From assembly GCF_030144855.1 (NCBI RefSeq), contig NC_082722.1, positions 27,528,001-27,592,000 of the forward strand: a stretch of DNA of 64,000 nucleotides, written 5' to 3'. This document shows positions 1-53,487 of this stretch, piece by piece (the stretch's first letter is position 1; each line of letters opens with the position of its first letter). A program made the translations under genes and the position numbers. The notes under the pieces were generated by a model. It saw only the letters and a list, made by a program, of their open reading frames with translations, was not told the DNA's origin and made no database searches. This stretch comes from Hypanus sabinus. Taxonomy: Eukaryota.

Positions 1-541
1 CAACACAGAGAATTTTAAAAAGGTTCCCCAAGGAACCAGGAAAGCTGAAAAGTTAGGTATTACTATAGACTGGAGTAACCCTGTTAAAAATAATGACTAA
101 TTTACTGCATTTTTTTTAAAGTTTTAATGTTAATGGGCTTAATGGACCGGTGACAAGAAAAAGAATTTTAACATACATTTAGTAAATGAAAATTACTTTT
201 AGCTGCATTCCATTTGAAAAAAATACTTATCATTTAAGATATAGATACGAAATATTACTGAAAATTTGGCACCCTTATTTACAAAAGATAGGATTAAATA
301 CATAGGTGCTCCAAAGATAAAATTATTGGTTATTTGGGGAAAGAAATAAATATATATACTAAAGCTATTATGAACTCCATGGAGCATGCGGGGATCTTCC
401 GATATCCAGGCATTCTTTCTTTCTTTCCTCTTTCTGCAGGGATATATTGAGGGGGGAGGGGTTAAGGGGAGGGGGTTAAGGTTGATATTTTTTTCCTTCT
501 GAAACCATTTGAAAATTCAATAAAAAAATTTGTTAAAAAAA
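1..541 (+). mobile_element. 3' part of an internally deleted L1-clade LINE (start of ORF2 endonuclease joined to the ORF2 C-terminus, 3' UTR, A-rich tail); runs off the left edge
   Basis: Co-linear with 31520-32190. FNVNGLNGPVTRKRILTYI-like APE start at about 120-190 is followed directly by C-terminal ...YEILLKIWHPYLQKIGLNT*, then a G-rich tract, AATAAA and an A tail at 519-541. Confidence 0.85.
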
Positions 542-805
542 GTAAGTATTTGTTGGTAACAGTTGTGCTACTATACTCTGTTCTGCATTAACCTGGTGCT
601 ATGCTCAAAAGGCTTTGACTTTCAATGAGGCTCTAAACTGGTAATAGCATAACTGCAGCAGTACCGTATTTAAGTATGGCAAACAGGATAGAAATTAAAA
701 CCAATGAGACGTACATAAATTGGTAAATGTCCTTTACACAATCAGAGGGAGTTTAGATCTATGCCAAATCATTTACGTTTCAAAATAAGGATCTGCCATT
801 GTATT

Positions 806-981
806 TTAAAAAAAAGACATTTGAAGAATTTCAAAGGGATGTATCAGATATGAAACAATTCCAGCTAACTGGAGATATACTTGAACTTCAACATCAAGCG
901 TGTATTGTGCCAAAATATTATCACTGAAATCCGGCTTCAAAAATCGCGATCCATGTCCAAACATTCTGTAAATGTCATTTA
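806..981 (-). CDS. Candidate cytoplasmic exon of the VJ-C1 receptor gene (VNDIYRMF...QMSFF*)
   Basis: AG acceptor at 983-982 after a 79-nt intron from the TM donor, phase 1, open for 58 codons. The same frame is open in the paralog (51366-51638) with three Tyr kept. The pyrimidine tract is weak and the acceptor is absent in the paralog. Confidence 0.3.
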
Positions 982-1060
982 CTGATTTTAAGTTAAATCT
1001 CATTAACACTTCTATTTTGTACGAATAGAGGCAATATTTATCAGCGATCAGTGTTCTTAC

Positions 1061-1165
1061 CTTGTGATCTCTTTAACTTGAGTATCAGCAAAACAATTAT
1101 AACAATTAAAATTAAATTTGCTGATGCGCCCTCTGCACATGCGAGAATCAATCTGGTATCAGCGC
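1061..1165 (-). CDS. Exon 4 (transmembrane) of the VJ-C1 IgSF receptor: (G)ADTRLILACAEGASANLILIVIIVLLILKLKRSQ
   Basis: Acceptor tttctttttcaag, donor G|gtaaga, 105 nt, phase 1-1 matching the C1 exon; hydrophobic run followed by a basic stop-transfer KLKR. Homologous exon at 51696-51794. Confidence 0.85.
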
Positions 1166-1966
1166 CTTGAAAAAGAAACCGTAAAGCATTTATACATCCA
1201 AAACAAATCCACACGAGAAGCTTGAACGCAAACGATTATATAGGGTCCTTACAAATCTCACTACACACTGATAGGAAAATGACAGAATATACAGTATAGA
1301 ACAAAAAAATCTGGGTTTTAGTTTCTCCAGATACATACGAGCTATTTACTAAGACTAAGAATAAGCTCGGCTACTTTTTCCTATACTTCGCTTGACAATA
1401 AGTATCAGCACAACAACTGAACGTGTAATCATCCAACCTAATACAATTCTGAGCTCGATTTAATCTTTTATTTCACTTATGTCAAGGACATTCTTTAGTA
1501 CAATCAAAATCCTATAGACAACTTGTAGACATGCCAAAGGAGTCCCGGTGCCGCAACATTTCACTTTTGCATTACATGCTGAAATTACTCACTATATTCA
1601 TGACTTTATAGCACTGAAACTTCTAAGCCTCCTGAATGTGTATCAAACATATGAAATGTGTTTTCCCACTGTTGAGTTTTCCACAGCTATACGAGTGACA
1701 AACCCGAATTAATGGAAAACTGCATAATGAAAGCATAGATAAACACAAGTCATGCATTTGAACTGCATTGCCCACTATTACTGGAAGGTAATTACACAGA
1801 GACTGAATTTTGTCAAAGTCTGTTCACAGTTTCACACCCTATGCATTTGTTCCACGTGGCAATAATGTGTCATGCCTCAGTGTTCAGGAATTCCTAGCAT
1901 GATGCTGATTTTGCCCCATGTCCACATTTTTTCCGGTAGAAATATGTTAATTAAATACACCTTCAC

Positions 1967-2061
1967 TCACCAGCAGATGGCTTCACCCTTCGTTATATCA
2001 CTATGCGATTTAGAGCTTAAGTTTTGCTTTGCCTCATCTTTAACAAATGTCCAGAAGTTTG
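1967..2061 (-). other. Possible alternative cassette/terminal exon between C1 and TM (ANFWTFVKDEAKQNLSSKSHSDITKGEAICW*)
   Basis: Phase-1 AG at 2063-2062 and a strong donor CTG|GTGAGT at 1970, both kept at identical spacing in the paralog (52585-52679). No transcript evidence. Confidence 0.3.
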
Positions 2062-2418
2062 CTACCTTACACGTACTACACAAAATCAATTTCCCAATTC
2101 ATCCTACATTATTTAAACTGAGAGTATAAGACATTTGTTTTTATACACCATTCACATTGAATGTTCACTGCAATCAGGTAATCTGAAAATTTCACCCTTC
2201 TTCCATGTTTGGCTAACTGTTCTGTGATTGCACTTAACCAGATTTGATCGACACACCTATGGCACTTGGAAACATTTCCACCTTGTCCAGAGCACTAGAA
2301 ATTTTGAACCAGTCGGATATTCGGAGTAACACAAAATGCAGCAGATCGGGAGAGGAATAAAATAACGACATTTTGGTCCGAGACTTTACATCTGGACGCA
2401 ATCAAGACACCATCTTAC

Positions 2419-2712
2419 CTTGCTCCAGGATGTTGCTGAAACTGACAGGCACCGTGAGGGAGACATGTGACACCAGGCAGGTGTAAACGTCTTTTCCCGA
2501 AGCAGGCTGATTAATTTCCAATGAACTGCAAGCCTTGTGTAAACGCTCCGCGGTCTGGTTTATCACAGTTTCAATTCCAGTGCGAATTTGCTGGTTATTT
2601 TTTTGCCAGACGAATTCAAATTCCTTTGGGTAGAAGGCAGCTGTTTTACAGAGGAGCTGCCGAGGAGACGAAAACACTCTAATAGGAACGATTTCCAATG
2701 GAGTTGGGGGAA
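2419..2712 (-). CDS. Exon 3 (C1-set Ig domain) of the VJ-C1 IgSF receptor
   Basis: LLCKTAAFYPKEFEFVW and YTCLVSHVSL match C1-set motifs (C-x4-F-Y-P-x2-I-x-V-x-W; Y-x-C-x-V-x-H). Acceptor tttttattcaag, donor G|gtaaga, 294 nt, phase 1-1. Confidence 0.93.
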
Positions 2713-3964
2713 CTTGAATAAAAAGATCGTTATATTGGGTATTTACCATTCATTAAGTTAAAGTAAACTCCCTTATCTCCCTGCTAATTACAATGACATC
2801 TCACTATCAAATTAGTTACCCGGCATAGGTTACAAGTATTTTATAAATTATTTTAAGTTTAAGTTCAAGTTCATAATTATTAAACCAGAGAGGTGTACAT
2901 GGCTAAATGAAACATCATTCTTCTGGGGTCAATTGCAAAATACAGTCCATGCATTCCCACACAACACGTGCAGTCACCAACAACCACATAGAGTGCAAAA
3001 TAAACAAAGTAAAATTGAGTCACAGTGCAGAAACAGATGTAAGGAATAATTCAAAGAAGTCAACGAGAAGGTGAATCTAAAGGGTGCAATGTGAGGAAGA
3101 CATTCTGTTTTGAATGGTATTTCAGCTTTATCACTCAATTATGTTTGCTGCAGCCCGTTGTCTTTGGAAACAGTTCCTTTCTGTATTTTTTCATTTCCAA
3201 TCCAAACTGAACTATAAAACCCAAAATATGACAGATTTTCACAGTCCAAACTCAATAAGCACTTGCACATGTTTATAATAATCTGGCAACTCATTTGTTC
3301 AGGTAGTTCTTCAGAGCTTGCGTTGGAGCTTTCCAGTCATCAACATTCACTGATCGAGCTTTCCAAAGAATGTAAATTATTGCTGGAAAACTTTTTCCGT
3401 ATTTAATGTGTTGAATGTGGCAAATCGTAGCCTCCGTGAAGCATCTAGGAAAGCAAATGCGAAGCTGATATTAAGCACATTTATTCTACGTTTCTATTCT
3501 TTCATAAACATGTCTAACTGCAGCAAAATGGTCGACAGTGACCTGGCACTGCTATACGAACGCTGATGTCCTGCAGAGAGGCAACCCGGGAGCTGAACGA
3601 TCTCCGTTTCCCCCTGCAGAGATTTCACTCAAAGGAGAACCCAAAATTCACGATTTTGCAAACGTGGACTGCCTCCGCTGCAACTATGCTCCGTATCTAA
3701 CTTAGGAAACTCTATTGTCAGATTGTTTTATCAATGTGCCACAACATTTAGCATTTCGCTCTGCCTATAATGGCCATCCTGAGCTCAGTTGCCCGCACAG
3801 CACTGCCATGGACCATGTACGGATGACAGCTGTTTACGTGCTTGTTGCTGTAAGGCAAATTTGTTTGTATAGGTCCCCAGGGCCCAATACGGAGTCACGT
3901 GCAACCTTTTTGGGAGGGTTCTGTAGAACTTTAAGGTGCCCTGATAGAGGCATTCAAAACGTCC

Positions 3965-4190
3965 TGACACACTGGTGAGGTGCCGGAGGACTGGATATGA
4001 CTAATGTTTTGTAGTTGTTCAAAAAAAGCTCTAAGAATACACCAGAGGTTTTTAGGCTGGTAAGCCTGATGCGTGAAAAGCCTAACTTACTCGAAATACA
4101 CATGACAGGTGAGAGCTGGGGAATGCCCGACTGTTTGGAATGAACTTAGCAGATTTAGTGCGTGCTAAGAGTAACTTTATTTCTTCTTCA
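3965..4190 (+). mobile_element. Old decayed CR1 LINE fragment in the V-C1 intron
   Basis: Degenerate EVPEDW..ANV..LFKK..K...YRLVSL-like sequence; shared with the paralog at about 55160-55330, so it predates the duplication. Confidence 0.5.
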
Positions 4191-4694
4191 AACTGGCGAT
4201 ATTTGTCCCTACCTCTGCCCTTGTAGGTCCATTTTGTATTAACAGAAAATGAGACAGTGAATCTGCATATCTATGCTTGTTTCAATGGGATCAGCATTGT
4301 GGAGCAGCACACTGATCAAGCTGTGTTTCTCTCTGTGGAGGTTTTAAGCAGACGTCTCGGAATTGATATTAATGAAGTGGCTTTGTTTGCCTTTCCTGAT
4401 GTTTATTAATTACTTATAAATATTTGTAGCTGTGCACTTCAGCAACTGTAGAATCGAAATCGGCATAATACGTTGAGATACAGTAGTATAGAAGCAGGCT
4501 GATGAACGGGAGGATATCGTTTAACCTCGACAACATTTCGTTTTAAGTAGGATGACTTGCGATTTACCCTTCAACTGAATTTGTCTACTGCTCCATATCT
4601 CTCATTACCTACCTGAATCAAATTCTTCATCTAAAAATGAGGTGGTTCCATTCATCCGCTGTTTAAAGCTTTTGATCGTTTAAAGTTGATAGTC

Positions 4695-6111
4695 AGCAAA
4701 TGTCACACCACTTTTTAAAAAAGGATTTAGGAAAAAGACGGGCAAATATAGGCCAGTTAGCTCAACATCTGTAGTTGGGGAAATGCTTGAAGCTGTCACT
4801 AAGGGAGAAATAGTGAAACGTTTAAAAGGAATGGTTCCATTAGATAGACGCAGCATGGATTCAGAAAGGGCAGGTCCTATTTGACAAGCTTACTGGAGTT
4901 CTTTGAGGACATAATGAATGTAGTCGATGGAAGGGAACAGGTGGTTGTCATATGCTTGGATTTCCAGGAGGCCCTCGATAAGGTGCCACATAAGAGAATA
5001 AAAAATTAGATATGGATGCATTAAGTCGAACGAAGTGCATTGTCATGGACAGTGGAATGGTTATGCAACAAAAGGCAGAATGTTGGCATAAATGGGCGTT
5101 TCTCCATGTGGCTGTCAGTGTTGAGTGGGATGACGCAGGGGTCAGTGCTGGGCCCAGAGCTGTTTACCATTCACATTGATGATTTGAAAGAGGGAAATGA
5201 GTGTAGCGTAGCCAAGTTTGCCGTTGACACTAAACAGAATGGAAAGCAAGTTGTATGGAGGATGTGGGCAGTCTGCAGAGGGATATAGATAAAGTGAATG
5301 GGACAAGATCTGGCAGATGGAATATAATGTTGGTAAATGCCAGATCATACACTTTGGAAGGAATAATAGAAGAGCAGATTATATTTAAATGCTGCAAAAT
5401 TGCAGCATGATGTTTTGCAGAGGGACTTGATAGTGCTTGGGCAGGAATCGCAAAGATTTGGCTTGCAGGTGCAACAGGTTTATGAAGGCGGCAAATTCAA
5501 TCTTTGCTTTCATTGCTGCAGGGATTGCATTCAGGAGCTGGCAGGTCATGCTGCAACTGTACAGGGTTCTGGTGACTGCACCTGGAGTACTGTATGCATT
5601 TCTGGTCACCATACTTGAGGATATATTGGCTTTGGATGCAGTGCAGAGGAGGTTCACGAGGTCGATTCCACAGATGAAGAGGAGAGGGACTATACTCTCT
5701 GGAATTCAGAAGAATGAGCGGGGATCTTAAAAACATACAAAACATGAAAGGGATAGTTAAGATAGATGTAGGAAATTTGTTTCCATTGGTAGGTGAGACT
5801 AGAACTAGGGGACATTGCCTCAAGGATCAGGAGAGAAAATTTAGGACGGAGATGAGGAGAAACTGTTTTTCACAGAGAGCGGTGAATCTGTGGAATTCTC
5901 TGCCCAGGGAAGCAGTTTAGTCTTCTTCACTAAATATATTTAGGATACAATTAGATAATTTTTTACATAGTAGGGGAATTGATGGTAATGGGGAAAAAGG
6001 CAGGCAGATGGAGCTGAGTTTGTGGGCAGATTAACCATGACGATACTGAATGGCGGGTCAGGCTCAACGGGCCGCATGGCCTACTCCTGCTCATATTTCT
6101 TATGTTCTTAT
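4695..6111 (+). mobile_element. 5'-truncated CR1-clade LINE (RT fragments with stops/frameshifts plus 3' UTR)
   Basis: NVTPLFKKG, QGSVLGPELFTIHIDDL, KFAVDTK, VQRRFTR and NLWNSLP motifs; 3' end ...ggcctactcctgctcatatttcttatgttcttat. Confidence 0.9.
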
Positions 6112-6414
6112 AGGCTGGCTGAGGAATATGCCAAGGCAGGAAGAGGGTGAGGCACTGTGTAGGAATATAGGCATAAATATGGTTGGAACTATCAACGGAC
6201 CAAGTAATAAGCGGAGCAAAAGCCAATCTGCAGAATCGCATCAAAATAATAAACATAACAATCTGAAAAATATTTCAAAATATTTTGGAAAAAAAGCTGG
6301 AAAATCACATTAATGGCACAAATTTTCAAACAGCAATAACATTTCCGCAATCTTGGCTTTTCTTCAAATGCAAAGAGCTGAAAGTTTTCCACTTACAGGA
6401 ATAAAGACACTTAC

Positions 6415-6720
6415 CTAACACAACAAGCTGAGAGCCACTTCCATATCCCAATATTTGTTGTTTAGTTTTCACTTGACAGTAATACACGCCGACGTCTGCG
6501 TATCTCACATTCAGGAGGGTAAATGTAGCCCTGCCTTTCTTTACATTGAACTGATTTCTGCTGCCTGGTTCTAGAAATGCTTCCTGACCCTCCTTCCGCC
6601 ACGAAACTTCAGCAGTATCTTGTAGTATTGGAAATTTGCAGAACATGGATACATTTCCACCGATTGAGACTTTTAAGGTTGGAGGTAATTGTTCCACTCT
6701 GGCCGAAGTTCCTTTTGAGG
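6415..6720 (-). CDS. Exon 2 (V domain with germline-joined J-like segment) of a non-rearranging VJ-C1 IgSF receptor
   Basis: ARVEQLPPTLKVSIGGNVSMFC...VSW...ADVGVYYC...GYGSGSQLVVL: both Cys, the Trp, D-x-G-x-Y-Y-C and a G-x-G-x-x-L-x-V J motif lie in one exon. Acceptor ttttgtcag, donor G|gtaagt, 306 nt, phase 1-1. Confidence 0.95.
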
Positions 6721-6906
6721 CTGACAAAACGTAAGTGAAAATGATGAAAACAGTTGCATTCACTGCACAGCGAATGAACAGACTGAATAGGCAGAACACT
6801 GGTATGCAAATTGGATGTTTACTATGGCTAAATTTGCTGCAGGTAAATGATGTACAATATTATAAAATATCTGTTTCATAGATTGAGCACAAACATTTAC
6901 GCGTAC

Positions 6907-6961
6907 CTGGCCAAAACGCGGCGAGCAGAGCCAAGAACCAAATGGTTGCATCCACCGACAT
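6907..6961 (-). CDS. Exon 1 (signal peptide) MSVDATIWFLALLAAFWP(A)
   Basis: ATG at 6961, hydrophobic core, CAG|gtacgc donor in phase 1 giving an in-frame join to the V exon across a 186-nt intron. Confidence 0.85.
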
Positions 6962-10299: not shown

Positions 10300-12087
10300 A
10301 CAATAGACAATAGGTGCAGAAGTAGACCATTCGGCCCCTCGAGTCTGCACTGCCATTCTGAGATCATGGCTGATCATTCACTATCAATACCCAGTCCCTG
10401 CCTTGTCCCCATATCCCTAGATTCCCCTATCCATCAGATATCTATCTAGCTCCTTCTTGAAAGCATCCAGAGAATTGGCCTCCACCGTCTTCCGAGGTAG
10501 TGCATTCCACACCTGCACAACTCTCTGGGAGAAGAAGCTCTTCCTCAACTCTGTTTTAAATAACTGACCTCTTATTCTCAATCCATGCCCTCTGGTACTG
10601 GACTCTCCCAACATCTGGAACATATTTCCTGCCTCAATCCTATCAAATCCTTTAATTATCTTAAACGTTTCAATCAGATCCCCTCTCAATCTCCTCAATT
10701 CCAGCGTGAACAAGCCCAATCTCTCCAATCTCTCTGCGTAAGACAGCCCTGCCATCCTAGGAATCAACCTAGTGAATCTACGCTGCACTTCCTCAATTGC
10801 CAGAATGTCCTTCCTTAAACCTGGAGACCAAAACTGTACACAATATTCCAGGTGTGGTTTCACCAGGGCCCTGTACAAATGCAAAAGGACATCCTTGCTC
10901 TTGTATTCAATTCCCCTTGTAACAAAGGCCAACATTCCATTTGCCATCTTCACTGCCTGTTGCACTTGCTCATTCACCTTCATTGACTGGTGAACTAGGA
11001 CTCCTAGGTCTCTTTGCATTTCTCCCTTACCTAACTCTACACCGTTCAGATAATACTCTGCCCTCTTGTTCCTGCTTCCAAAGTGGATAACTTCACATTT
11101 ATTCACATTGAATGACATCTGCCAAGTATCTGCCCACTCACCCAGCCTATCCAAGTCTCTCTGTATTCTCCTAACGTCCTCTTCGCATGTCACACTGCCA
11201 CCCAGTTTAGTATCGTCAGCAAACTTGCTGACATAGTTTTCAATGCCCTCATCTAAATCATTGACATAAATCGTAAAGAGCGGTGGTCCCAATACAGAGC
11301 CCTGTGGTACCCCACTAGTCACCTCCAGCCAGTCCGAGAAACACCCATTCACTGCTACCCTTTGCTTTCTATCTGTCAACCAGTTTTCTATCCATGTTGA
11401 AACCCTGCCCCCAATGCCATGAGCTCTGATTTTACTCACCAATCTCCTATGTGGCACCTTATCGAATGCCTTCTGAAAATCTAGGTATACAACACCCACT
11501 GGCTTATCCTCGTCTAACATCCTTGTTACACCCTCAAAAAACTCCAACAGATTAGTCAAGCATGATTTGCCCTTGGTAAATCCATGCTGGCTCGGCCTAA
11601 TCCTATTTCTGCCATCTAGGTGTGCCACTATTTCGGCCTTAATAATGGACTCAAGCATCTTCCCCACGACTGACGTTAGGCTAACAGGGCGATAGTTCTC
11701 CGTTTTCTCCTTCCCTCCCTTCTTGAAAAGTGGGATAACATTAGCCACTCTCCAGCCTTCAGGAACTGATCCTGAATCTAAGGAACATTGGAAAATGATT
11801 ACCAATGCATCCGCAATTTCCTGAGCCACCTCTTTTAGAACCCTCGGATGCAGAACATCTGGACCCGGGGATTTATTAGCCTTCAGTCCTACCAGTCTAC
11901 TCATCACAGTTTCTTTCCTAATGTCAATCTGTCTCAATTCCTCTGATATCTTATGACCCAAACCCATCCATACATCTGGGAGATTGCTTGTGTCCTCCCT
12001 GGTGAAGACAGATCTAAAGTACGCATTAAATTCTGTTGCCATTTCCCTGTTTCCCATAACAATTTCTCCCAATCCATTCTTCAAGGG
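10300..12087 (-). mobile_element. Young 5'-truncated CR1-clade LINE with uninterrupted RT-to-C-terminus ORF
   Basis: ORF 10417-12381 contains KSPGPD, YRPVSLTS, QHGF, LDFQKAFD, QGSVLGP and FADD with no stops; (CTATTG)n-type tail at about 10300-10313. Only the part below about 12087 is CR1. Confidence 0.95.
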
Positions 12088-12650
12088 CGAAATGGGCTGA
12101 AGTCCTGGTGCAATGCCGGATGAAGCCATGGATCCATCTACAGGGTGGTGAGGTGTGTTCCTTGGAATGCCGAGGATAGTAGGGTGTTGTGAGAATGCCA
12201 TAGGGCTATTGTGTGATTTACATAATTGGTGCTTGATTGTAGGCATGCACTTAGTCGCCCGAATGCGTTCTACACATGTATAACTTATTCCCGTAAACCA
12301 GCAAACTATTCTCCAATTGTGGCCAATTATATTCTCCAAATATAACTTATTCTCCTGTGTTAAGGTCAAGTGAAGAAACAAGGACTGGAAACAATTGTTC
12401 CACTCATATAAATTAATTTATAGGTAAAAAAAAAATACCCACCTGAATTTTGGAGCTGAGAGCAATATTCTCCTGTTTAATAGAAGGGAATAATAATGAC
12501 AGTCGAGGGTAAAACAAAGTACAGATGTCTTAAGAGCTTAAAATGCACCTTACAAATATTGGCCAGATTGTATGTAAATCATCATGTGCCTGTTAATTGA
12601 AATTTATTCACTGCTGAGGCGGTGTTTGAAAGTTTGAAAGTTTCTGTTTG

Positions 12651-16560: not shown

Positions 16561-16738
16561 CATCTCTGACAAGGGCTCCCAACCTCGGTTAATGGTGGGG
16601 GTTTATAGCATGAAAAGGTTGGAAACCCCTGACATATGGAGAGGTATAATATAAACAATCAATGGTTCAGATCGAGAACCTTCTTCAGTCTTTGAAGAGG
16701 ATATGCCCTTGATTAGCCTGTTTTCTTAGGGGGAGCGT

Positions 16739-17094
16739 ATTGGAGTATAGAAGTTGCAACTTGCTATTTGCTGGAGAATGAAATCTTAGGAATGTAGAAG
16801 ACAATGGTGTGTTAATGAGAGGTAACTAAGAGATGTAGATTTGAACATGATTAAGTCAATAGTTAGAAACAATAGTGTCAGATGTCCTTCTGATACGCTC
16901 CTATAGACCAATTGGATATGCTAATGCAACTAAACCAGGAGATTGCTATAAAAAACGCTATGTACAAGGATCGGTGGGCAATCAGCGACTAGCTCAATGG
17001 CCGTCTCAGCTTTGATTTGCAAATTAAAGTTTAATACTTCTTTAAGAAACTTCTGCGCCTCCTGGCCCTTTGTGGGGCACGAGAAATCACGACA
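16739..17094 (+). repeat. ERV 5' LTR (356 bp)
   Basis: Aligns with 27812-28226 at about 11% mismatch (hand count); TATA-like gctataaaaa; ends ...cacgaca before the PBS. Confidence 0.9.
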
Positions 17095-17098
17095 AGAT

Positions 17099-17116
17099 TG
17101 GCGACCGCGGCAGGAC
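17099..17116 (+). promoter_or_regulatory. Primer-binding site complementary to tRNA-Arg(UCG)
   Basis: TGGCGACCGCGGCAGGAC, 4 nt after the LTR, is the reverse complement of the 3' 18 nt of vertebrate tRNA-Arg-TCG as I recall it (...GTCCTGCCGCGGTCGCCA); not database-checked. Confidence 0.75.
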
Positions 17117-17534
17117 CGGAAAGAGACCTGCGGAAAGGAAACGGCAGATTGGGGACGCTTTCCGGTCCTCTAGGGACCCCCACAGGGTTAACAGAATAAA
17201 CAGTGCACCCAAACAAAAGGCAAGTGCTTTTTGCGACAATTTGGACTAAGAACTCTGTTGGTTTTGGGGAGGTCTTGGAGACTCAGAAGTGTGGAACCAC
17301 TGCCGAAGGGTCTCTCCGGTCCAAAGAATCTGCCAGAATTGGGGGTTAACAGGAGGCTCAGAGGATTGATCAAGAACACTGCAGTGAGGGTATGTACAAA
17401 TGTTAATAAGAAGTTAAGAAAACTTCCACGTGGTGTTGGTAAATCTCTGTGGATACCGCTTCGTATAAAGCAAAGGTCTGAACGGGCAGGGAAAGGGAAA
17501 ATAGAGCAAATCCTCGTGGCCTTGTGTAAAGCCT

Positions 17535-20500
17535 TGTGTTGCCTTTATGGCATTTGTTTAGTTTATAATATTTTTGCTTTAGTAATTCGTTTGTTAGCAT
17601 TTTCTAGTTAAAGTTAGGATTGTTTAAAGTAAATTCGTTGTCTGTGATATATCGCGGCATGTGGTGACGTCACATCTGGTTTTGCCGCATCTTGTGGGAA
17701 AATACCGGGTTGGAGAAACGGGAAGAAGGGGTCTCATATGTGCAAGATCAGCGCAAGAAAAGTTGTCTTTCTATGCACTAGAAACATAGTGAAGCAAAGC
17801 CTTTTCACCATACGTTAATGTGGAAGAGTGAACAGTAAACAGTTAATCTTACTGCGATCTGTTTTCATTGACTACGGTTTACCTCAGTGCTTAGTTCAGA
17901 GGTCCATTACACCTGAGCGAGAACACTACAGTGAAAAGGCGTTGTTATCAAGTGTTTCAAGTGCTGCAATGACAACTCGATCCAGCATCAAGTCGTTGCC
18001 ATCCAGCGACAGGGGCAGTAGGGCATCATCAAGTAGGGCTGCCCATTCAAGTGCTAAGACAGGAGCCGCCACGGTGCGAGCATTCTACATCAAACAAGAA
18101 GCAAAATTGAAAATGGAAGCGGCTGCCAGAGAAGCCGAAAACCAGATGGAAGTGGCTGCTAGAGAAGTCGAAAACCAGAAGGAAGCGGCTGCCAGAGAAA
18201 TGGAAAAGGCTGCCAGAGAAGCCAAAAACCAGTTGAAAAGGGCAAGGATAGCGTCAGAGTTAGAAGTGCTGATGCTACACCGAGAAGCACAAGCTGCCAG
18301 GGTGGAAGCAGAGTTAATAGAAGATGCTGAAGAAATGCATGATCTGGTTGACGTAAAATCTACTTCAGAAAAGATCAGATTGGAACACACAAGCGACTAT
18401 GTCCGATCTCAAATAGACTGGAAGATTCGTTGTTCCTCCCCATACTTATATGGTAATGCCCCATTTCATGAGGAGCCTCAGAGAGACCCAATTGCATCAC
18501 AACCATCCGAGGAAGACAATTTACCCTTGCAACTCCGCGATGAATTCAAGAATGAAAGGGCTGATGACAAATATTTCGATGCCAAACTTACCAGATTTGT
18601 AGAGAAGAGAGGCAAAGGCTGAATTCAGAACAGCAAATTCCATAACAGAGGTACGCCCTCAGCCATATACCCGCTGACCTATTCCCCCAGGCCGCATGCC
18701 ACTTGCAGTTGAACCCATGGCACGGTATTTAGCATGACGAGATTTCGTCACTTCAGGACTATACCAGTTTGAAGACAAACCTGAAAATTGTCATGCATGG
18801 TACTACATTCACCAACGCTATCCACGGAGTGCAGCTCAGAGCAACCCAAGAGTTGGATCTTATGGCAAAATGGCTGGGGAAAAGAATCATGCGAACAAGT
18901 GAGATGCATACGTTTAGTGTTCATCAACAACCCCAAGCTAGCCTTACGCAAAGCATAGGAGAGACTTCGGGAGGGCTATGCGGCCCCCAAAATTATTGAA
19001 GTGGCACTATACCGATGTCTGGAAAATTTTCCAGAGGTGTCTGCCAAGGACCACACTAAGTTAAGAGAGCTCGGAGATTTACTCATCGAGATTCAAGGCG
19101 CCAAAGACGATGGCTACTCAACTGGTCTATTATACCTAGGCACTCCGTACGGGATTAGACAAATCGTGGACAAACTTCCATTTGGGCTGCAGGAAAGGTG
19201 GATGTCCGTTGGCGGAGAGTACAAGGAAGAGAACAATGGTCGATTTCCTCCCTTCGAGTATTTCACTAGGCTTGTGTGCAAGGAGGCGAAGAAGCGAAAT
19301 GACCCTAGCGTCATTGGTCGAGGAAGCAGTACAATTTACACCAAGTCAGATAAATCCTCTTCGAATAATTTCAACATTAATAAACCCGCCTCAGTGCTTA
19401 GGACTGAAGCCTTTACAACTAAAAACGATCTTAGCAAGAATTGTCCATTCCATAACAAAGCCCACCCCCTCAAAAAATGCAGAACATTTAGGGAAAATCC
19501 CCTTGGAGAGGTTGGCCCTTCTCAAGGAGAAAAAAAAATGTGTTTAATGCTGTTCCTCGACCTCTCACCTTGCTCGAGAGTGTACGATCGCCGTGAAGTG
19601 CCCGAAATGTAATAGCACTAATCATGATGGGGCCATGCATCCCGGCCCGTTACCGCAAACCAACAAAGCTCCTTCACCCTCACAACAGGACGGCGGAGAG
19701 GAAGAGGCTCACTCCAGGACAACTGTTGTCAGCTCGAGTTGTACAGAAGTTTGCAGTCAAGCTCAGTCAAGCCGTTCTTGTTCAAAGATCTGCCTCACTA
19801 AGGTATACCCTAAGGGAGCCAAAGACAAGGCCATCAAAGCTTATGTAATTCTGGAAAATCAGAGCAATCGCTCACTAGTCAGACCAGAGTTCTTTAACTT
19901 GCTCCACATTGAGTGTAATCAGTTCCCATACTACCATAGAACTTGCTCAGGCAGAGTGGAAACTTATGGAAGGAAAGCAGAAGGCTTCCAGCTCGAGTCC
20001 CTGGATGGTAAAGTCGTCATCTGTCTCCCTCCGCTCTTAGAGTGCAATGAAATTTTGAATAACCGCACTGAGATCCCGACACCAAGTGCAGTGCTACACC
20101 AGCCACATCTCCACCACATTGCCAAGCACATCCCAGAACTGGGGTCAAAAGCAGAAATACTCCTGCTATTAAGAAGAGATTTTCTCCGGGAGCACAACGT
20201 TAGGCAGCAGGTCAATGGACCACATGACGCCCCCTTTGCGTAACGCCTGAATCTGGGCTGGGTGGTGATAGGAGAGGTGTGCCCTGGCAATGTACACAAA
20301 CCGTCGGTTAAGACATTCAAGACCAATGTACTAGAGAGTGGCCGCCATTCAAGTTTTTCAACCCCGCACAAGTGTCATGTGCATTAAGGAAGCACAACAA
20401 GGCTTTAACAAATGTAAAGTAACTGACGAGACGCTGGGTCAGTCAGTCTTCGCTCAAATTGAGCATGATAATAAACTTGCTCCATCAGCTCAAGACGCCA

Positions 20501-21626
20501 TTTTCTGAAAAACAAAGGACACCAAGGTCTTCAAAGACGAAGCAAGTAATTGGGTCGTCCCACTACATTTCAGAGAACCACGCCAGTGCTTGCCAAACAA
20601 CAAAGAGCAGGCAGTCAAGCGGTACACGTCCTTGCAAAACACCTCGAAAAGGAAACCTGATATGCAGCAACGCACCCGATTGACCCACGAGGTACTGTGC
20701 ACACTAATGGCAGAGGTCACAGCCATTATAAATGCACGACCACTCCTATCCGTGTCTTCTGACCCAGAAAACCCCTTCATACTCTCGCCATCAGTGCTCC
20801 TTAAGCAGAAGGCAGGAGCGCCCCCTCCACCAGAGGACTTCTCTGATAAGGACTTGTACACAAAGCAATGGAGACAGCTCCAGGCTCTGGCAAATCGGTT
20901 CTGGTCTCGTTGGAGACAGGAATATCTACCTTTGGTGCAGCACAGACAATAGTGGACAGAACCCTGCAGGAATCTTCAAGTTGGAGATTTAGTCCTGTTC
21001 AGGGATAAGCAAATCGCCCGCAACAGCTGGCCAATGGCCAGAATCACTGCCACATTCCCTAGTAGGGATGGACGTGTCAGGAAGGTTGAGTTGAGAACTA
21101 CCGACCAAGATGATGCGAAAATTTACCAAAGGCCAGTTGCAGAAGTCATTCTACTTCTACCCAAGGACTGATTTGGAGACTGAAGTTTTGTATTATTTTC
21201 ATTGTGAACCTACGACAGTCAAGCGTGGAGTGTGTTGCCTTTATGGGATTTGTTTAGTTTATAATATTTTCACTTTAGTAATTCGTTTGTTAGCATTTTC
21301 TAGTTAAAGTTAGGATTGTTTAAAGAAAATTCGTTGTCTGTGATATATCCCGGCATGTGATGACGTCACATCCGGTTTCGCCGCGTCTTGTGGGAAAATA
21401 CCGGTTTGGAGAAACGGGAATGAGGGGGCTTACAGGTGCAAGCTCAGCGCAAGAAAAGTTGTCTTTCTACGCACTAGAAACATAGTGAAGTAACGCCTTT
21501 TCACCATACGTTAATGTGGAAGATTGAACAGTAAACAGTTAATCTTACTGTGATCTGTTTTCATTGACTACGGTTTACCTCTGTGTTTAGTTCAGAGTTC
21601 CGTTACACCTGAGCGAGAACACTACA
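17535..21626 (+). mobile_element. BEL/Pao LTR retrotransposon, internally deleted, nested in the ERV leader
   Basis: 396-bp TG...CA LTRs at 17535-17930 and 21231-21626 (about 6.6% mismatch, hand count); gag with Cys/His knuckles, protease (ILENQSNRSL), integrase end LMAEVTAIINARPL and FWSRWRQEYL; RT and RNase H missing. Confidence 0.9.
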
Positions 21627-22079
21627 CCCCTTAAGAGATAAGGGTCTGAACAGATGAGGTGCAAAGAGCAAGTTCTGTGGATACCGCTCTGAATAGAAGT
21701 CTGTAAGGGCAGAACAGAATAGCAAACAAGGACAGTCCAATATATAGTTTAAAGCGCTGGCAGATAGATGATAGACTAGGCATAGAATTAGAGTAATTAA
21801 TATTATCCAGTAAACGAACTGTGAATCTCTGAAATACCTTAAAAAGAGAGAAAAACATGGCAGGTAACGGCTGTAGAGATTCTGAGCAAAAAAATTCCCG
21901 ATAAATAAATATCAGATCACAAAAACTTCAGAAAAAACGGGAAAAAAGAAGCAAAAACCTGGTCCCAAAGTGGCCAAGAGAAGAAACGTTTGATGTAAGC
22001 TTGTGCGAAGAAATGGAGGGACTAATTAAAAATTACAAACCAAAAGATAAATCTAAGAGGGCAAAAAAGAGAATGAGAA

Positions 22080-24163: not shown

Positions 24164-24269
24164 GCGAGGTATTAGGGGTGCCCCAAGAACTGAAATGGGC
24201 AGGGGCATTACACAATAATAACAAGGGAGGCAGACAAGGAACCCATTGTTCAGGTTATGTTAGAAGGGC

Positions 24270-27200: not shown

Positions 27201-27295
27201 ATTGTGCAAGGGGGAAAGTGATAAAGAAGGATGGTTTTTGGTCACCTTATTTACAGGCTTCAGTGGACTTCGTCATGTCACAGTGGGCGGTATGA
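24270..27295 (+). pseudogene. pol: ERV pro-pol (protease, 2H-like insert, RT, RNase H, integrase zinc finger; integrase core deleted)
   Basis: MIDTGATYT, LHCTVIF...VPNVTLL, RT motifs in ORF 24715-25752, FVDGSC, YTDSAYA, HGIDH...; many stops and frameshifts. Confidence 0.85.
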
Positions 27296-27309
27296 ACACA
27301 GAATGCAGT

Positions 27310-27593
27310 GTTCGGGCGTCAGTTATTTGACTGGTTATAAAGTAGATTCAGGATGGGGAGCATGGCTGACTAAAATGGCAATAACTGTCAGTATTGTATT
27401 GTTGAGCTGTGCGCTTGTGCTGTGCTGTTTTCTTCCTTGTCTCAAGTCTCTTGTAGTGAGTGCTGCAACCAAACAATTTCCGATGCTCGTGGCAATTACT
27501 GAAGCAAGCTTATTGGAGAAAGAAACACCAAAAATGTATCGTTACAGCCTACAACACCTGCAGGATGAACAAGAGCAAAACAACAGTATGTGA
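27310..27593 (+). pseudogene. env: ERV env C-terminal remnant (membrane anchor plus cytoplasmic tail)
   Basis: GWGAWLTKMAITVSIVLLSCALVLCCFLPCLKSLV..., a W-rich membrane-proximal region plus hydrophobic, Cys-rich anchor just upstream of the PPT and 3' LTR. Confidence 0.65.
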
Positions 27594-27811
27594 GTTGATT
27601 GTAAGGGCTTTGGAGACTTTTTCCCTGTCTCAGGTACAGAGGGACAGGTTTTTGGCTCAGCAGCCCAGGGTAACAGGGAGAGAATACTTTGAGGTCCTGG
27701 CGCAGAAAATTATTGTTTAACCCGAGATTTGGGAATAAGTGCTTGAGTCTATTGGGGCTTTTGAGCGCGGAATCTTAGTCTTCTTTCTCTGGGACTCAAA
27801 GGGGGACTATA

Positions 27812-47340: not shown

Positions 47341-47516
47341 TAAAAACATTATGCTTGTACCAGGATGTTAAGTTGTATGTGGTGATAGGTTACTTTTCAC
47401 TGAAAGGGGATTAGTTATGACGCACGTTATATTTTGCTACTCTGTCAATGGTATGCTCAAGTTTGTAAAATTAACCCTCTTGAATGATGATTATATACAT
47501 AATTATGAACCCTCTA

Positions 47517-47630: not shown

Positions 47631-47789
47631 AATATAAATCTTTATCACATTCTCGCTAATCACTCTGCTTTACCTAGGAATAGATAATGCGCTCCTCATG
47701 TTGTCGATCTTTGCGAAATGGTTTTCTCTCCCTATGGTTTAGTGAAGCATAGGCAGTGGAGTGCTCAACCAGTGCTTGTTCAGCTTGTC

Positions 47790-50849: not shown

Positions 50850-51052
50850 TCAAATAAATCTTGGATATATACTTGAAAATAAATATTTGACGGGGGAAAT
50901 AGTTTTAATTTCCCCACTACTCCTCAAAGTGTTATGGAATAAAATAGATTCATAATATCTTTGCTCTGCTAATATCCCGCTCTGATGAAGATGTGTCGCT
51001 TCATCTGCCGGGTCTGCATGCTGGCACCCGACCAAAGAATTCGTGTTACGGC
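50850..51052 (-). pseudogene. Probable last (cytoplasmic) exon of the paralog: (G)RNTNSLVG...QRYYESILF...VKYLFSSIYPRFI*
   Basis: Long pyrimidine tract ending ttttctgaag, phase 1 compatible with the TM donor, about 67 open codons with Tyr motifs; ATTAAA about 310 nt downstream. Confidence 0.55.
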
Positions 51053-53346
51053 CTTCAGAAAACAAATCAAAAAGAAATAAATTGCATTGCAAACATTGAA
51101 CATTGTTCATTTGATACCAATCGAATTAATCGTGTAAGTGGAACTGCTTAATGCACGGAACGTTCAGGAAGTATTTGGTGGTAACAGTCGTGTTAATGTA
51201 CTGTTTTCTGCGTTCATCTGATGCTATGCTCAATAGGCTTTGCCTTTCAACGAGGCTGTAAAGTCATAAAAGCATAACAGCGACCGTACTGTATTTAAAT
51301 ATTGTAACCAAACTGAAAATAAAGCCAATGAGATGTACAAAAATTGGTCTATGTTCCTTTAGCAATCAGAGGGAGGCTGAAACTACATCAAGTCGTTTAT
51401 CTTTCAAAATACGGATATGCCATTGTTGTAAAAATATATTTTTGAAGAACCTCACTGGGATATAACTGCATTCGTGAATGAAATACGAAATACTTCGAGA
51501 GGGCTGGTGAAATAGCTGAATTTTAAGATCCAGCATGTATTGTGCCAGAATATTATCACTCAAATCTGGCTTCGAAAATCGCGATCCATATCCAATTATC
51601 ATATAAATGTCATTTGTTGTTTTGAAGTTACTTATCATTAACGCTTCTGTTTTGTACGAATCGGGGTGATGTTTCTCAGCGATCAGTGCTCTTACCGTGC
51701 AATCGTTTCAATTTGATTTTCAGCAAAACTATTATCAGAACTAAAATTGCCGATCAGCCCACTGCACATGCGAGAATCAATCTGGTATCAGCGCCTTGAA
51801 AAAGAAACGGTGAAATATGCATGCGTCTAAAAACAAATCCAGCCATGAGAATCAGCAATGCAAACTATTATATAGGTTCCTTTCAAATCTCACTACACTC
51901 TGATAGGAAAATGGCAGAATATACAGTATAGAACAAAGAAATCTGGTCCTTAGCTTCTGCAGAAGCATATGAGCTGTTTACTGAGACTAAGAATAGGTTC
52001 AGCTGCATCTTCCTATACTTCCTTTGAATATAGATACAAGCACAACTATTGAACGTCAAAACTGATACGATTTTGATCTCGATTCAACCTTTTACGTCAC
52101 GTCTGTCAAGGACGTTCTTTCGTATGATCAAAACCATACAGATAACTCGTAGACTCGCCAAAGGAATCCCGGTGCAGCAACAACTCCCTTTTGCATTGCA
52201 TGCTGAAATTACCCTCTAACTTCATGAGTTTATAACACTGTACCTTCTATGCCTCCTGTATCTTTATAGAACAGATTAAACGTATAATTCCCACGTTTAC
52301 GGCTTCGACAACTTTACGAACGACAAATCCAAATTCATGTAAACCTGCATAATATAAGCATAGACCAAACTGAAGACTCCCATGTGATCTGTATTTCACA
52401 CTAATTGGAATGTAATTACGCGGACTGACTTTTGTTAAAAACTGTTCACAGTATCGCTATCTATGTATTCGTTCCAGGTGACAATTAAGTATCACGCGTC
52501 AGTGTTCAGGAATTCTTATAATGATGCTGATTTTTCCCCATCACGTTTTTCCGATAAAACTATATCAATTAAGTACACCTTCACTCACCAGCAGATGGTT
52601 TCTCCCTTTGTTATCTCACTATGCGATTTACAGTTTAAGTTTTGCTTTGTCTCATCGTTGACAAATGTGCAGAAGTTTTCTACCCTACACGTACGACACG
52701 AGTTCAATTTCTTAATTCACCTACGCGATTTTAACTGAGGGTATAAGACGTCTGTTTTTCAACAGAATTCGCATTTAATGTTGACTGAACACAAGTAATC
52801 TTAAAATATCGCCCTTCTTCCGTGTTTGGGAAACCGTGCTGCGATTGTTCTTAACCTGATTTGATCGATCCCACCTATATCATTTGAAAACACCTCCATC
52901 TTGCCCAGAGCACTCGAGATTCTGAACGTGTTGGAAATTCATAGTAACACAGAAAATGCAGAAGGAACGCAGCAGATCAGGAGAGGAATAACATGTCGAC
53001 GTTTCGGTCCGACACCTTATATCACTACGCCATCAAGAAACCAACTTACCTTGCTCCAGGATGTAGCTGAAACTGACAGGCACCGTGAGGGAGACATGCG
53101 ACACCAGACAGGTATAAACATCTTTTCCCCAAACAGACTGATTAATTTCTAATAAACTGTAAGCCTCGTATAAACTCTCCGCTGTCCGGTTTGTCACAGT
53201 CTTCTAATGCGCATATGCCTGTCATTTTTTTTTTTTTTTTTTTGTCAGATGATATCTAATTCCTTTGGGTAGAAGGAAGCTATTTTACAGCTTCCCAGGA
53301 GACGAAAACCCTCTAATCGGAACGATTTCCAATGGAATTGTGGGAG
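50850..53346 (-). pseudogene. Disabled paralog of the VJ-C1 receptor gene: C1 exon 53050-53346, TM exon 51696-51794, probable cytoplasmic exon 50850-51052
   Basis: About 80% co-linear with 545-3700. C1 acceptor AG changed to AC, a frameshifting deletion before the first Cys, conserved Trp TGG changed to TGA, an expanded A-run, and TGA in the TM exon (51754-51756). No leader or V exon found up to 64000. Confidence 0.9.
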
Positions 53347-53487
53347 GTTGAATAAATAGATAGTTACTTTGGAGTTTACCATTCAATTTGTTGAAGTAAA
53401 TTCCTTTATCTTCCCGCCAAATACAATGACATTTCTCTATCAAATTTGTTACTCGCTATAGGCTTCCAGTATTTTATAAATTATTTT

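What the first reader, a model, noticed from the sequence alone, without database searches (positions are those of the whole stretch)
1061..6961. Intact non-rearranging VJ-C1-TM receptor gene: antigen-receptor architecture with no recombination
Seen: leader, V, C1 and TM exons splice in phase 1 into one open frame (MSVDATIWFLALLAAFWP-ASKGTS-ARVEQ...GYGSGSQLVVL-VPPTPLE...YTCLVSH...EQ-GADTRLIL...KLKRSQ). The J-like G strand is already fused to V within one exon, and no RSS sits at or inside it. Known: C1-set domains are largely limited to Ig, TCR, MHC, beta-2-microglobulin, tapasin, SIRP and B7H6-like proteins. Non-rearranging VJ-C1 genes (PRARP/VJC1-type) have been proposed as relics of the pre-RAG receptor, and NKp30 has a VJ domain but no C1. 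Inference: this is an elasmobranch VJ-C1 family that may be uncharacterised. It is not a germline-joined light chain, since it has a TM exon, and it lacks the basic TM residues of a TCR chain.
Basis: partly seen in the sequence, partly recalled or inferred. Interest (0 to 1): 0.9.

Follow-up and report, generated by a model that had tools for sequence, protein, structure and literature searches.

The report
Recombinant VJ-C1 innate receptor gene, ray
This is a real non-rearranging immunoglobulin-type receptor gene, one recombinant and possibly incomplete copy of a large shark and ray family that works more like paired inhibitory/activating receptors such as SIRP than like an antibody or T-cell receptor chain.

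Summary
All are phase 1 with AG/GT sites, and there is no RSS.

"Intact" is not shown. A splice donor follows the TM exon, and no cytoplasmic exon lies in the window.

The gene belongs to a multigene family found across Chondrichthyes, with RefSeq models in at least 15 species of rays, sharks and a chimaera. NCBI names these models inconsistently: B7H6-like, SIRP-alpha-like, TCR-beta-like, Ig-lambda-like, tapasin-related-like and PD-L1-like. Full-length members carry ITIM plus ITSM tails. Others have an Arg in the TM and short tails. That makes it a paired innate receptor family.

The window copy is a mosaic:
- Leader, V and half the intron are orthologous to Hypanus sabinus LOC132407123 (clade A).
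- C1 and TM come from a different subfamily (clade B).
- The junction lies at 4109/4110.

A decayed clade-B 3' fragment lies at 47.6-55.3 kb.

The family is a well-supported clade, but it is equidistant (about 20% identity) from SIRP, B7H6, Ig, TCR and TAPBPL.

The scan has noted at least nine other genes of this build elsewhere in this genome.

Verdict: a real gene, and a new variant of a known kind. Interest is moderate.

The parts
6907..6961 (-). Leader exon (ATG at 6961), ends in phase 1 before a GT donor
   Evidence: It is 91% nt identical to the leader of Hypanus sabinus LOC132407123.
6415..6720 (-). Single-exon VJ domain (compact V, J-like Y-G-S-G-S-Q-L-V-V). Belongs to clade A of the family.
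   Evidence: Pfam hits I-set and V-set at about 1e-9. AF2 pLDDT is 92.6 and the G strand is split at the GxG. Foldseek finds CD79b, Ig lambda V, VNAR, NKp30 and TCR V-alpha. The V tree places it in clade A with 100/98 support. No RSS is present.
4110..6414 (-). V-proximal part of the V-C1 intron. It is orthologous to the Hypanus clade A gene and holds an old LINE RT fragment (about 4696-6090).
   Evidence: Window 7692-4110 aligns to L001 33789-37413 at 83.6% nt, and the alignment ends exactly at 4110.
541..4109 (-). Clade-B-derived block carrying the C1 and TM exons. The recombination junction lies at 4109|4110.
   Evidence: Window 541-3648 matches 51166-55036 at 78-81% nt. A weak match continues to 4109. 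The only Hypanus L001 match is a paralogous 66% match at the C1 exon.
2419..2712 (-). C1-set exon (PPTPL linker, CKTAAFYP, YTCLVSH), clade B type
   Evidence: Pfam C1-set at 8.5e-9. PDB hits are Ig C, MR1, UrIg2 and MHC II beta. It is 84% identical to Hemitrygon akajei P0163 and 49-54% identical to clade A. The C1 tree places it in clade B with 100/99 support.
1061..1165 (-). Stalk and TM exon (Cys in the stalk, Glu and Asn in the N-terminal part of the helix, KLKRSQ stop-transfer), followed by a GT donor at 1059-1060
   Evidence: Unspliced read-through would add GKNTDR and then a stop. It is close to the TM of P0163.
1..541 (.). Repeat-like sequence that interrupts the intron after the TM exon. 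The expected cytoplasmic exons are not here.
   Evidence: It matches window 31522-32188 (77-82%), which lies in an insertion absent from Hypanus. No tail-like coding sequence is present in any frame.
53051..53347 (-). Decayed second copy of the clade B C1 exon (stops and frameshifts)
   Evidence: tblastn at 8.6e-26 with internal stops. The nucleotide alignment is 82% identical with 13 gap columns.
51696..51794 (-). Decayed second copy of the TM exon (in-frame stop)
50953..51059 (-). Cytoplasmic exon 1 of the decayed copy
   Evidence: tblastn with the tail of P0004.
47662..47784 (-). Cytoplasmic exon 2 of the decayed copy (STAYASL, RIIYS, then a stop)
   Evidence: tblastn with the tails of P0006 and P0154, 2e-13.

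Best explanation
Shown: the locus encodes the leader, ectodomain and membrane anchor of a type I membrane protein. It belongs to a multigene family of non-rearranging VJ-C1 receptors found across Chondrichthyes.

Shown at family level:
- A compact V domain with a germline J-like G strand sits on one C1-set domain.
- Then come a short stalk with a Cys and a TM helix.
- After that comes either a 100-140 residue tail with an ITIM (LTYAAL type) and an ITSM (TLYADV or TEYAEL type), or a short tail with an Arg in the TM.

Inferred: by analogy with SIRP-alpha/beta, the long-tailed forms should recruit SH2 phosphatases and inhibit the cell that carries them. The Arg-TM forms should pair with an ITAM adaptor and activate it.

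Shown for the window copy: it is a recombinant.
- Its leader, V exon and 2.3 kb of intron are the ortholog of Hypanus sabinus LOC132407123 (clade A, short-tailed).
- From position 4109 leftwards, the rest of the intron and the C1 and TM exons derive from a clade B gene (the ITIM/ITSM-tailed subfamily, closest to Hemitrygon akajei P0163).

Shown: the TM exon ends in a splice donor, and a repeat interrupts the next intron.

Inferred: the clade B cytoplasmic exons, if kept, lie beyond the window's left edge. If they are present and spliced, this copy puts a clade A binding domain on an inhibitory clade B signalling half.
For: - Exon structure and open frame.
- Domain identity.
- Family breadth: searches give homologs with the same build in Mobula (two species), Hypanus, Hemitrygon, Pristis, Narcine, Amblyraja, Chiloscyllium (two species), Heterodontus, Heptranchias, Scyliorhinus, Mustelus and Callorhinchus. 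A 5' decayed 202-aa fragment also turned up on a short Logan contig.
- Tails and TMs of members.
- The family C1 forms a clade with 100/98 support. There is a clear gap in similarity: family C1 domains score at least 53 bits, and other C1 domains at most 48 bits.
- Mosaic: the identity table, the V and C1 trees, collinearity with the Hypanus locus ending at 4110 and the junction.
- Preservation: 34 of 36 family-conserved positions are kept. The V exon is 90.8% nt identical to the ortholog, against 83.6% in the intron.
- Shuffling recurs in the family. Mobula P0160 and P0164 join a clade B ectodomain to a clade A type TM and tail, while their close relative P0155 has the clade B TM and ITIM tail.
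Against: - There is no transcript evidence of any kind.
- No cytoplasmic exon lies in the window, so the signalling half of this copy is inferred.
- The neighbouring clade B fragment is a pseudogene, so the inserted half could be on the same path.
- The TM has Glu and Asn where the closest relative has Val and Ile.
- V exon substitutions against the ortholog are mostly non-synonymous (23.5 against 4.5, omega about 1.5 on few sites). That fits either diversifying selection or relaxed constraint.
- The hybrid junction could be an assembly error in a repeated gene cluster.
- ITIM and ITSM function and adaptor pairing are inferred from motifs only.
Confidence: 0.75

Rival explanations
1. The hybrid is a dead or dying gene. 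A V-less 3' fragment of a clade B gene landed in, or was fused to, the clade A gene. It cut that gene off from its own C1 and TM exons, and nothing useful is made.
For: - A second copy of the same fragment, 50 kb away, is clearly decayed.
- No tail exons lie in the window, and a repeat sits just after the TM exon.
- The TM has polar substitutions.
- Omega is about 1.5 in V.
Against: - All four exons are open with good splice sites.
- The ectodomain keeps 34 of 36 conserved positions, which is within the range of annotated members.
- The C1 copy in the gene has no lesion, whereas its sister copy has several over the same length.
- The V exon is more conserved than the intron.
Confidence: 0.3
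2. The family is the cartilaginous-fish branch of the SIRP family (true co-orthologs), reduced to one C1 domain.
For: - The logic is the same: a V with a J-like motif, C1-set domains, ITIM tails and activating partners with a basic TM residue. The SIRP features are taken from PMC12975943.
- Human SIRP-alpha (2wng) scores 116 bits against the family profile, with V and C1 in one stretch.
- SIRP-alpha and SIRP-beta give the best whole-model TM scores, 0.73-0.76.
- The only bony-fish V-C1 hit of the profile search is a sturgeon SIRP-beta-like protein.
- Some family members have two C1 domains.
Against: - Identity is only 18-22%, no better than to TCR-beta, Ig lambda, B7H6, TAPBPL or PD-L1.
- In the C1 tree the family does not join the lungfish, coelacanth or sturgeon SIRP-like domains. 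The node is unresolved.
- UrIg2 and Ig heavy chains score as high in the PDB profile search.
- The V domain is much shorter than a standard V domain.
Confidence: 0.2
3. The genes are B7H6 (NCR3LG1) orthologs, as many RefSeq names say. On this reading they are ligands for NKp30-type receptors rather than receptors.
For: - RefSeq names many of the models this way.
- B7H6 is among the best Foldseek matches (E 2e-12, 21-23% identity, TM 0.66-0.70).
- B7H6 also has a V plus C1-like ectodomain.
Against: - The same proteins are named after six other families by the same pipeline.
- B7H6 chains are not among the 60 best PDB profile hits, while SIRP and UrIg2 are.
- The family has ITIM/ITSM tails and Arg-TM partners, which is the signature of receptors.
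- The V domain carries a J-like motif and resembles NKp30, CD79b and VNAR rather than B7 V domains.
Confidence: 0.1
4. One reading: the family is a direct relic of the non-rearranging VJ-C1 receptor that the RAG transposon later split, alongside UrIg and PRARP.
For: - It has a germline VJ exon with a split leader, a C1 domain and a membrane anchor.
- The V domain matches Ig lambda V, VNAR, TCR V-alpha, CD79b and NKp30.
- It is present in all three chondrichthyan lineages, so it is at least about 400 My old.
- The UrIg2 structure is a top profile hit.
Against: - No tree places it next to Ig or TCR (one search is unresolved).
- The V lacks the C'/C'' region.
- MHC-type findings of the scan lie on other pieces of the assembly (unchecked notes).
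- Any VJ-C1 receptor such as SIRP shares these features.
Confidence: 0.12
5. The clade A/clade B junction is an assembly artefact that joins two paralogous genes.
For: - The cluster is repeat-rich and holds many paralogs.
- The junction is sharp.
- An assembly gap lies in the window at 35361-35530.
Against: - The gap is 31 kb away from the junction.
- The two clade B copies are only 78-82% identical, which is too different for a collapse.
- Mosaics of the same kind occur in independent Mobula assemblies.
Confidence: 0.06

Closest known systems
SIRP family (SIRP-alpha, beta, gamma)
   Same: - It is a non-rearranging V domain with a J-like G strand on C1-set domains.
- It has single-pass membrane anchorage.
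- It has inhibitory forms with ITIM-type tyrosines and activating forms with a basic TM residue.
- It is a multigene cluster.
- It gives the best whole-model structural match (TM 0.73-0.76), and SIRP-alpha is a strong profile hit.
   Different: - Most members here have one C1 domain rather than two.
- The V is much shorter and lacks C'/C''.
- Identity is only about 20%.
- No tree support links the family's C1 to bony-fish SIRP-like C1 domains.
- The ligand is unknown.
[quoted passage not shown] 2019, J Immunol 202:1992, cited in PMC10751288)
   Same: From my knowledge of the abstract: non-rearranging VJ, a C1 domain in non-avian species, a TM and a possible ITIM tail.
   Different: PRARP was described as a gene pair in bony vertebrates, not as a family of dozens. 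No PRARP sequence could be brought into the tools and the paper is not held, so relatedness is untested.
UrIg / UrIg2 (PMC12227049)
   Same: - It is an elasmobranch, non-rearranging gene with a single-exon VJ, a split leader and C1-type domains.
- The UrIg2 structure 9dmx is among the best hits of the C1 exon and of the family profile.
   Different: - UrIg has three C domains and is secreted.
- UrIg2 has nine to eleven C domains.
- Both are single-copy, and no ITIM tail is described for them (one search found no mention).
- The present family has one C1, many paralogs and signalling tails.
NKp30 (NCR3) and B7H6 (NCR3LG1)
   Same: - NKp30 has a compact VJ-type domain, and 3noi is a structural match to the window's V (E 4e-8).
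- B7H6 has a V plus C1-like ectodomain and gives many of the RefSeq names.
   Different: - NKp30 has no C1 domain.
- B7H6 is a ligand.
- Neither family stands out from TCR, Ig, SIRP or TAPBPL in any comparison made here.
Ig light chains and TCR chains
   Same: Same V(J)-C1 order. These are the top Foldseek hits by E-value.
   Different: There is no RSS and no separate J segment. There are no basic TM residues. Tails carry ITIM/ITSM motifs. The predicted interdomain geometry differs (TM 0.40-0.48).

Membership tests
Chondrichthyan VJ-C1 receptor family (RefSeq models named NCR3LG1-like, PTPNS1-like and others) | Exon order leader, VJ, C1, TM, with all junctions in phase 1 | tested here: met
   RefSeq proteins P0001, P0006 and P0154 have the same order.
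Chondrichthyan VJ-C1 receptor family (RefSeq models named NCR3LG1-like, PTPNS1-like and others) | Family-conserved residues of V (W..GE, DSG.YYC, G.G...L.V), the PPTPL linker and C1 (C.TA.FYP, YTCLVSH) | tested here: met
   34 of 36 positions conserved in at least 85% of members are kept. Both domains fall inside the family in trees.
Chondrichthyan VJ-C1 receptor family (RefSeq models named NCR3LG1-like, PTPNS1-like and others) | ITIM plus ITSM tail, or Arg in the TM with a short tail | tested here: inconclusive
   No tail exon lies in the window and the TM exon ends in a donor. The TM has no Arg. The donor subfamily (clade B) has ITIM/ITSM tails.
SIRP | One V and two C1-set domains | tested here: not met
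   Only one C1 exon lies between the V and TM exons, and there are no other Ig exons in the window. A few relatives have two C1 domains.
SIRP | Inhibitory ITIM form paired with an activating form that has a basic TM residue | tested here: met
   Met at family level only. The feature definition comes from PMC12975943.
SIRP | Sequence or phylogenetic grouping with SIRP proteins | tested here: inconclusive
   The node is unresolved in the C1 tree. Identity of 18-22% is equal to that with other families. The family profile scores 116 bits against 2wng.
B7H6 (NCR3LG1) | Specific similarity to B7H6 above other V-C1 proteins | tested here: not met
   The Foldseek E-value is the same as for TCR-beta, Ig lambda, TAPBPL and SIRP. 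B7H6 is absent from the 60 best PDB profile hits.
NKp30 (NCR3) | A single VJ domain joined directly to the stalk and TM, with Arg in the TM | tested here: not met
   A C1 exon is present and the TM has no Arg.
Rearranging Ig/TCR chains | V and J as separate segments flanked by RSS | tested here: not met
   V and J lie in one exon and no RSS is present.
UrIg / UrIg2 | VJ followed by three or more C1-type domains | tested here: not met
   There is one C1 exon. The UrIg architecture is taken from PMC12227049.
PRARP | Sequence relatedness to the PRARP genes of bony vertebrates | not testable with these tools
   No PRARP sequence or paper could be fetched. No bony-vertebrate protein other than a sturgeon SIRP-like one, multi-V lungfish proteins and CEACAM5 passed the profile search.

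The most novel reading that the evidence does not exclude
The family may be the cartilaginous-fish survivor of the pre-RAG VJ-C1 membrane receptor lineage. On this reading it is sister to the stock that gave rise to Ig/TCR, UrIg, PRARP and SIRP. It would still show the ancestral mode of use: a germline-encoded, paired inhibitory/activating receptor that diversifies by exon shuffling between paralogs, as in this locus, rather than by somatic recombination.
Probability: 0.12. Interest if true: 0.8.

Novelty: new variant of a known kind. Interest (0 to 1): 0.45.

Why it matters
Non-rearranging VJ-C1 genes are the material from which the origin of antibodies and T-cell receptors is reconstructed. 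So far the shark candidates are UrIg and UrIg2, and the other candidates are NKp30, SIRP and PRARP.

Here is a large family present in rays, sharks and chimaeras. It has the same ectodomain build but checkpoint-type signalling tails. Genome annotation labels it with seven unrelated names, so comparative studies that rely on names will miscount B7H6, SIRP, TCR and Ig light chain genes in these species.

The locus also gives a dated example of domain shuffling between subfamilies, by comparison with Hypanus. That is how such families make new receptor and signal combinations.

For this single gene the importance is modest. It is one copy among many, and its 3' end is not in view.

Tried and rejected
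1. Searching with the whole spliced protein.
2. PDB profile search with the V alignment alone. Multi-domain proteins such as titin, Robo and contactin swamp the list, so it was useless for ranking single-domain families.
3. Looking for a second V exon for the decayed copy, and for clade A C1 or TM remnants in the window. None were found.
4. Looking for ITIM-bearing exons downstream of the TM exon, or anywhere else in the window. Only the decayed exon at 47662-47784 turned up.
5. Fetching the locus of the closest C1 relative, P0163. It is not on record.
6. Reading Kinlein 2021 (shark NCR3 family), Flajnik 2012 (B7H6/NKp30), Ohta 2015 and 2019, and the first UrIg paper. None are held. I therefore cannot exclude that some members were described there under NCR3 or B7H6 names.
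7. A C1 tree with SIRP-like, MHC-like and Ig-like outgroups. The family is monophyletic but its neighbours are unresolved.
8. MHC linkage through the scan's notes. MHC-type notes lie on other pieces of the assembly. These notes are unchecked, so linkage is not settled.

Full report
**What is there.**

On the minus strand, four exons join in phase 1 into an open frame of 253 codons:
- leader 6907-6961, with the ATG at 6961
- V 6415-6720
- C1 2419-2712
- stalk and TM 1061-1165

Each has a canonical AG acceptor and GT donor. Pfam calls the second exon I-set/V-set (1.4e-9 and 4.8e-9) and the third C1-set (8.5e-9). The C1 exon finds Ig C, MR1, UrIg2, IgM and MHC class II beta chains in the PDB at about 1e-8.

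An AlphaFold model of the window's own V exon is confident (pLDDT 92.6). It has strands A, A', B, C, D, E and F and a G strand broken at the G-S-G of the J-like motif. There are no C'/C'' strands, and only 54 residues lie between the two cysteines. Its best structural matches are CD79b, Ig lambda V, shark VNAR, nanobodies, NKp30 and TCR V-alpha, at 20-27% identity. No RSS-like signal lies in or near the V exon or elsewhere in the window. The regex scan found no other Ig-type exon in the window. Apart from the decayed copy described below (found by tblastn), the rest is retroelement-rich.

The TM exon ends in a splice donor, so the protein goes on. Unspliced read-through would add six residues and a stop. 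No tail-coding sequence exists in window 1-1060 in any frame. Window 1-541 is a repeat-like sequence that also occurs at 31522-32188.

**The family.**

Searching with the V-containing ORF found two Mobula RefSeq proteins with the same build and 77-79% identity in V. An exhaustive search with the C1 exon, and word-based searches with a full-length relative and a family profile, found dozens more. They come from Mobula birostris and M. hypostoma, Hypanus sabinus, Hemitrygon akajei, Pristis, Narcine, Amblyraja, Chiloscyllium (two species), Heterodontus, Heptranchias, Scyliorhinus, Mustelus and Callorhinchus. Many paralogs sit on one 80-90 Mb chromosome per species.

NCBI's automatic names for them conflict:
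- natural cytotoxicity triggering receptor 3 ligand 1-like
- tyrosine-protein phosphatase non-receptor type substrate 1-like
- M1-specific T cell receptor beta chain-like
- immunoglobulin lambda-1 light chain-like
- tapasin-related protein-like
- programmed cell death 1 ligand 1-like
- class II DP alpha-like
- CD276 homolog

A Foldseek search with a confident model of a member's ectodomain (pLDDT 89) returns most of these reviewed proteins (not the class II chain), all at E about 1e-12 and 17-24% identity. That explains most of the names and shows that none is a specific relative.

**How the family is built to work.**

Full-length members (for example P0154 of Hypanus, P0006 and P0153 of Mobula, P0181 of Heterodontus, P0177 of Callorhinchus) have tails of 100-140 residues. 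These carry an ITIM such as LTYAAL and an ITSM-type TLYADV or TEYAEL. Other members have a TM with Arg and a D-H pair at its end, and a short tail. A third group has a plain TM and a short tail.

This is the pattern of paired inhibitory/activating innate receptors. SIRP-alpha/beta, built of a V and two C1-set domains, is the textbook case (PMC12975943). That the motifs recruit SH2 phosphatases or ITAM adaptors is an inference from the motifs.

**Relation to known families.**

The family's C1 domains form a clade with 100/98 support on a long stem. Its position relative to lungfish, coelacanth and sturgeon SIRP-like, MHC-like and Ig-like C1 domains is unresolved. Family C1 domains score at least 53 bits against the window exon, and all other C1 domains at most 48 bits.

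In the PDB, the ectodomain profile hits several families:
- UrIg2 at 139 bits
- SIRP-alpha at 116 bits, with V and C1 in one stretch
- SIRP-gamma at 103 bits
- Ig heavy chains, up to 148 bits

B7H6 is not among the best 60. The only bony-fish V-C1 protein passing the profile search is a sturgeon protein whose own best PDB match is SIRP-alpha at 5e-35. SIRP is thus the closest working analogue and a possible distant relative, but membership is not shown.

UrIg and UrIg2 differ in having three, or nine to eleven, C domains and in being single-copy (PMC12227049). PRARP could not be compared.

**The window copy is a mosaic.**

- Its V is 75-79% identical to clade A proteins (P0001, P0002, P0014, P0019) and 42-49% identical to clade B.
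- Its C1 is 84% identical to Hemitrygon P0163 and 59-76% identical to the other clade B proteins, but 49-54% identical to clade A.
- Trees place the V in clade A (100/98) next to Hypanus P0019. They place the C1 in clade B (100/99) next to P0163 (92/89).

The window is collinear with the Hypanus sabinus locus of P0019 (LOC132407123, CM057990.1 at 21.20-21.26 Mb) from about 60 kb down to position 4110, at about 84% nt identity. That run includes the leader and V exon. The match stops 170 bp before the Hypanus C1 exon.

From 4109 down to 541, the sequence is instead a copy of window 51166-55277. That second copy carries a C1 exon with stops and frameshifts, a TM exon with a stop, and two cytoplasmic exons. 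One of those (47662-47784) has STAYASL and RIIYS followed by a stop. It has no V exon, and it lies in a block absent from the Hypanus locus.

So a V-less 3' part of a clade B gene was copied at least twice in this lineage. One copy now supplies the C1 and TM exons behind the clade A V exon. Whether this arose by insertion into the intron or by a deletion that fused two neighbouring genes cannot be told from the window.

Similar mosaics exist in Mobula. P0160 and P0164 have a clade B ectodomain with a clade A type TM and tail, next to P0155 with the clade B TM and ITIM tail. Exon shuffling is therefore a habit of the family.

**Is the hybrid alive?**

For:
- The exons are open and the splice sites are good.
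- 34 of 36 family-conserved positions are kept, against 0-7 misses in annotated members.
- The V exon is more conserved than the intron (90.8% against 83.6% nt).
- The C1 exon is clean, whereas its sister copy is not.

Against:
- There is no transcript evidence.
- No tail lies in the window.
- The TM has polar changes.
- V changes are mostly non-synonymous (23.5 against 4.5).

I put about 0.6-0.7 on an expressed product and about 0.4-0.5 on its having an ITIM/ITSM tail.

**Literature.**

Full-text searches found no description of this family. The papers most likely to mention it (shark NCR3 family 2021, B7H6/NKp30 2012) are not held, so prior description under another name cannot be excluded.

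The scan itself has flagged at least nine other genes of this build in this genome. Six lie 0.6-7.6 Mb before the window on the same piece, one lies 14.5 kb beyond its end, and two are on other pieces. Those notes are unchecked, but they agree with the RefSeq evidence from other species.

**Verdict.**

This is a real gene fragment with a correct exon model. It is a recombinant member of an unnamed, chondrichthyan-wide VJ-C1 paired-receptor family. It works most like SIRP, and it is not shown to be a member of any named family. The family deserves a proper description. This single copy is of moderate interest.

Noticed in passing
window 43865-56410: A block of about 12.5 kb is absent from the orthologous Hypanus sabinus locus (L001 13432-13930). 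It carries a V-less, decayed 3' half of a clade B family gene: C1, TM and two cytoplasmic exons.
   Followed up: partly
window 16735-28229: An insertion of about 11.5 kb relative to Hypanus. It holds long ORFs, including a reverse transcriptase (24715-25752, RVT_1 at 4.9e-15) and several unassigned ORFs of 190-270 aa.
   Followed up: partly
window 10417-12381 (-): A 654-aa ORF with a reverse transcriptase domain (RVT_1 at 2.3e-33), of LINE type. Related copies lie at 47788-49169 and 4696-6090, and several times in the Hypanus locus.
   Followed up: partly
L001 10001-10162 and 28834-28995 (Hypanus sabinus CM057990.1): The RefSeq model XP_059849401.1 (P0019, 414 aa) starts with about 100 residues from two upstream exons that resemble repeated sequence. 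It also reads 14 residues of the leader intron. The real start is probably the MSVDATVW methionine at L001 34524.
   Followed up: partly
P0160, P0164 and P0155 (Mobula): Near-identical ectodomains are joined to two different TM and tail types. One is the clade A type short tail and the other is the clade B ITIM tail. This is a second case of exon shuffling in the family.
   Followed up: partly
P0013 (Amblyraja), P0171, P0176, P0007 (Callorhinchus): Some family members have two C1 domains, nearly identical tandem copies in the skate. One chimaera model (P0007) reads C1-V-C1, which may be two genes fused by the predictor.
   Followed up: no
P0024, P0038, P0175, P0049, P0032: Some short-tailed members (P0024, P0038, P0175) have an Arg early in the TM. 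Those three and P0049 end the helix in a conserved I-I-V-D-H-V motif (I-L-V-D-H-A in P0049; P0032 has I-I-F-D-H-V). An Asp/His pair there is unusual for activating receptors.
   Followed up: no
window 35361-35530: A run of 170 N, either an assembly gap or masked sequence. It was left as it is.
   Followed up: no
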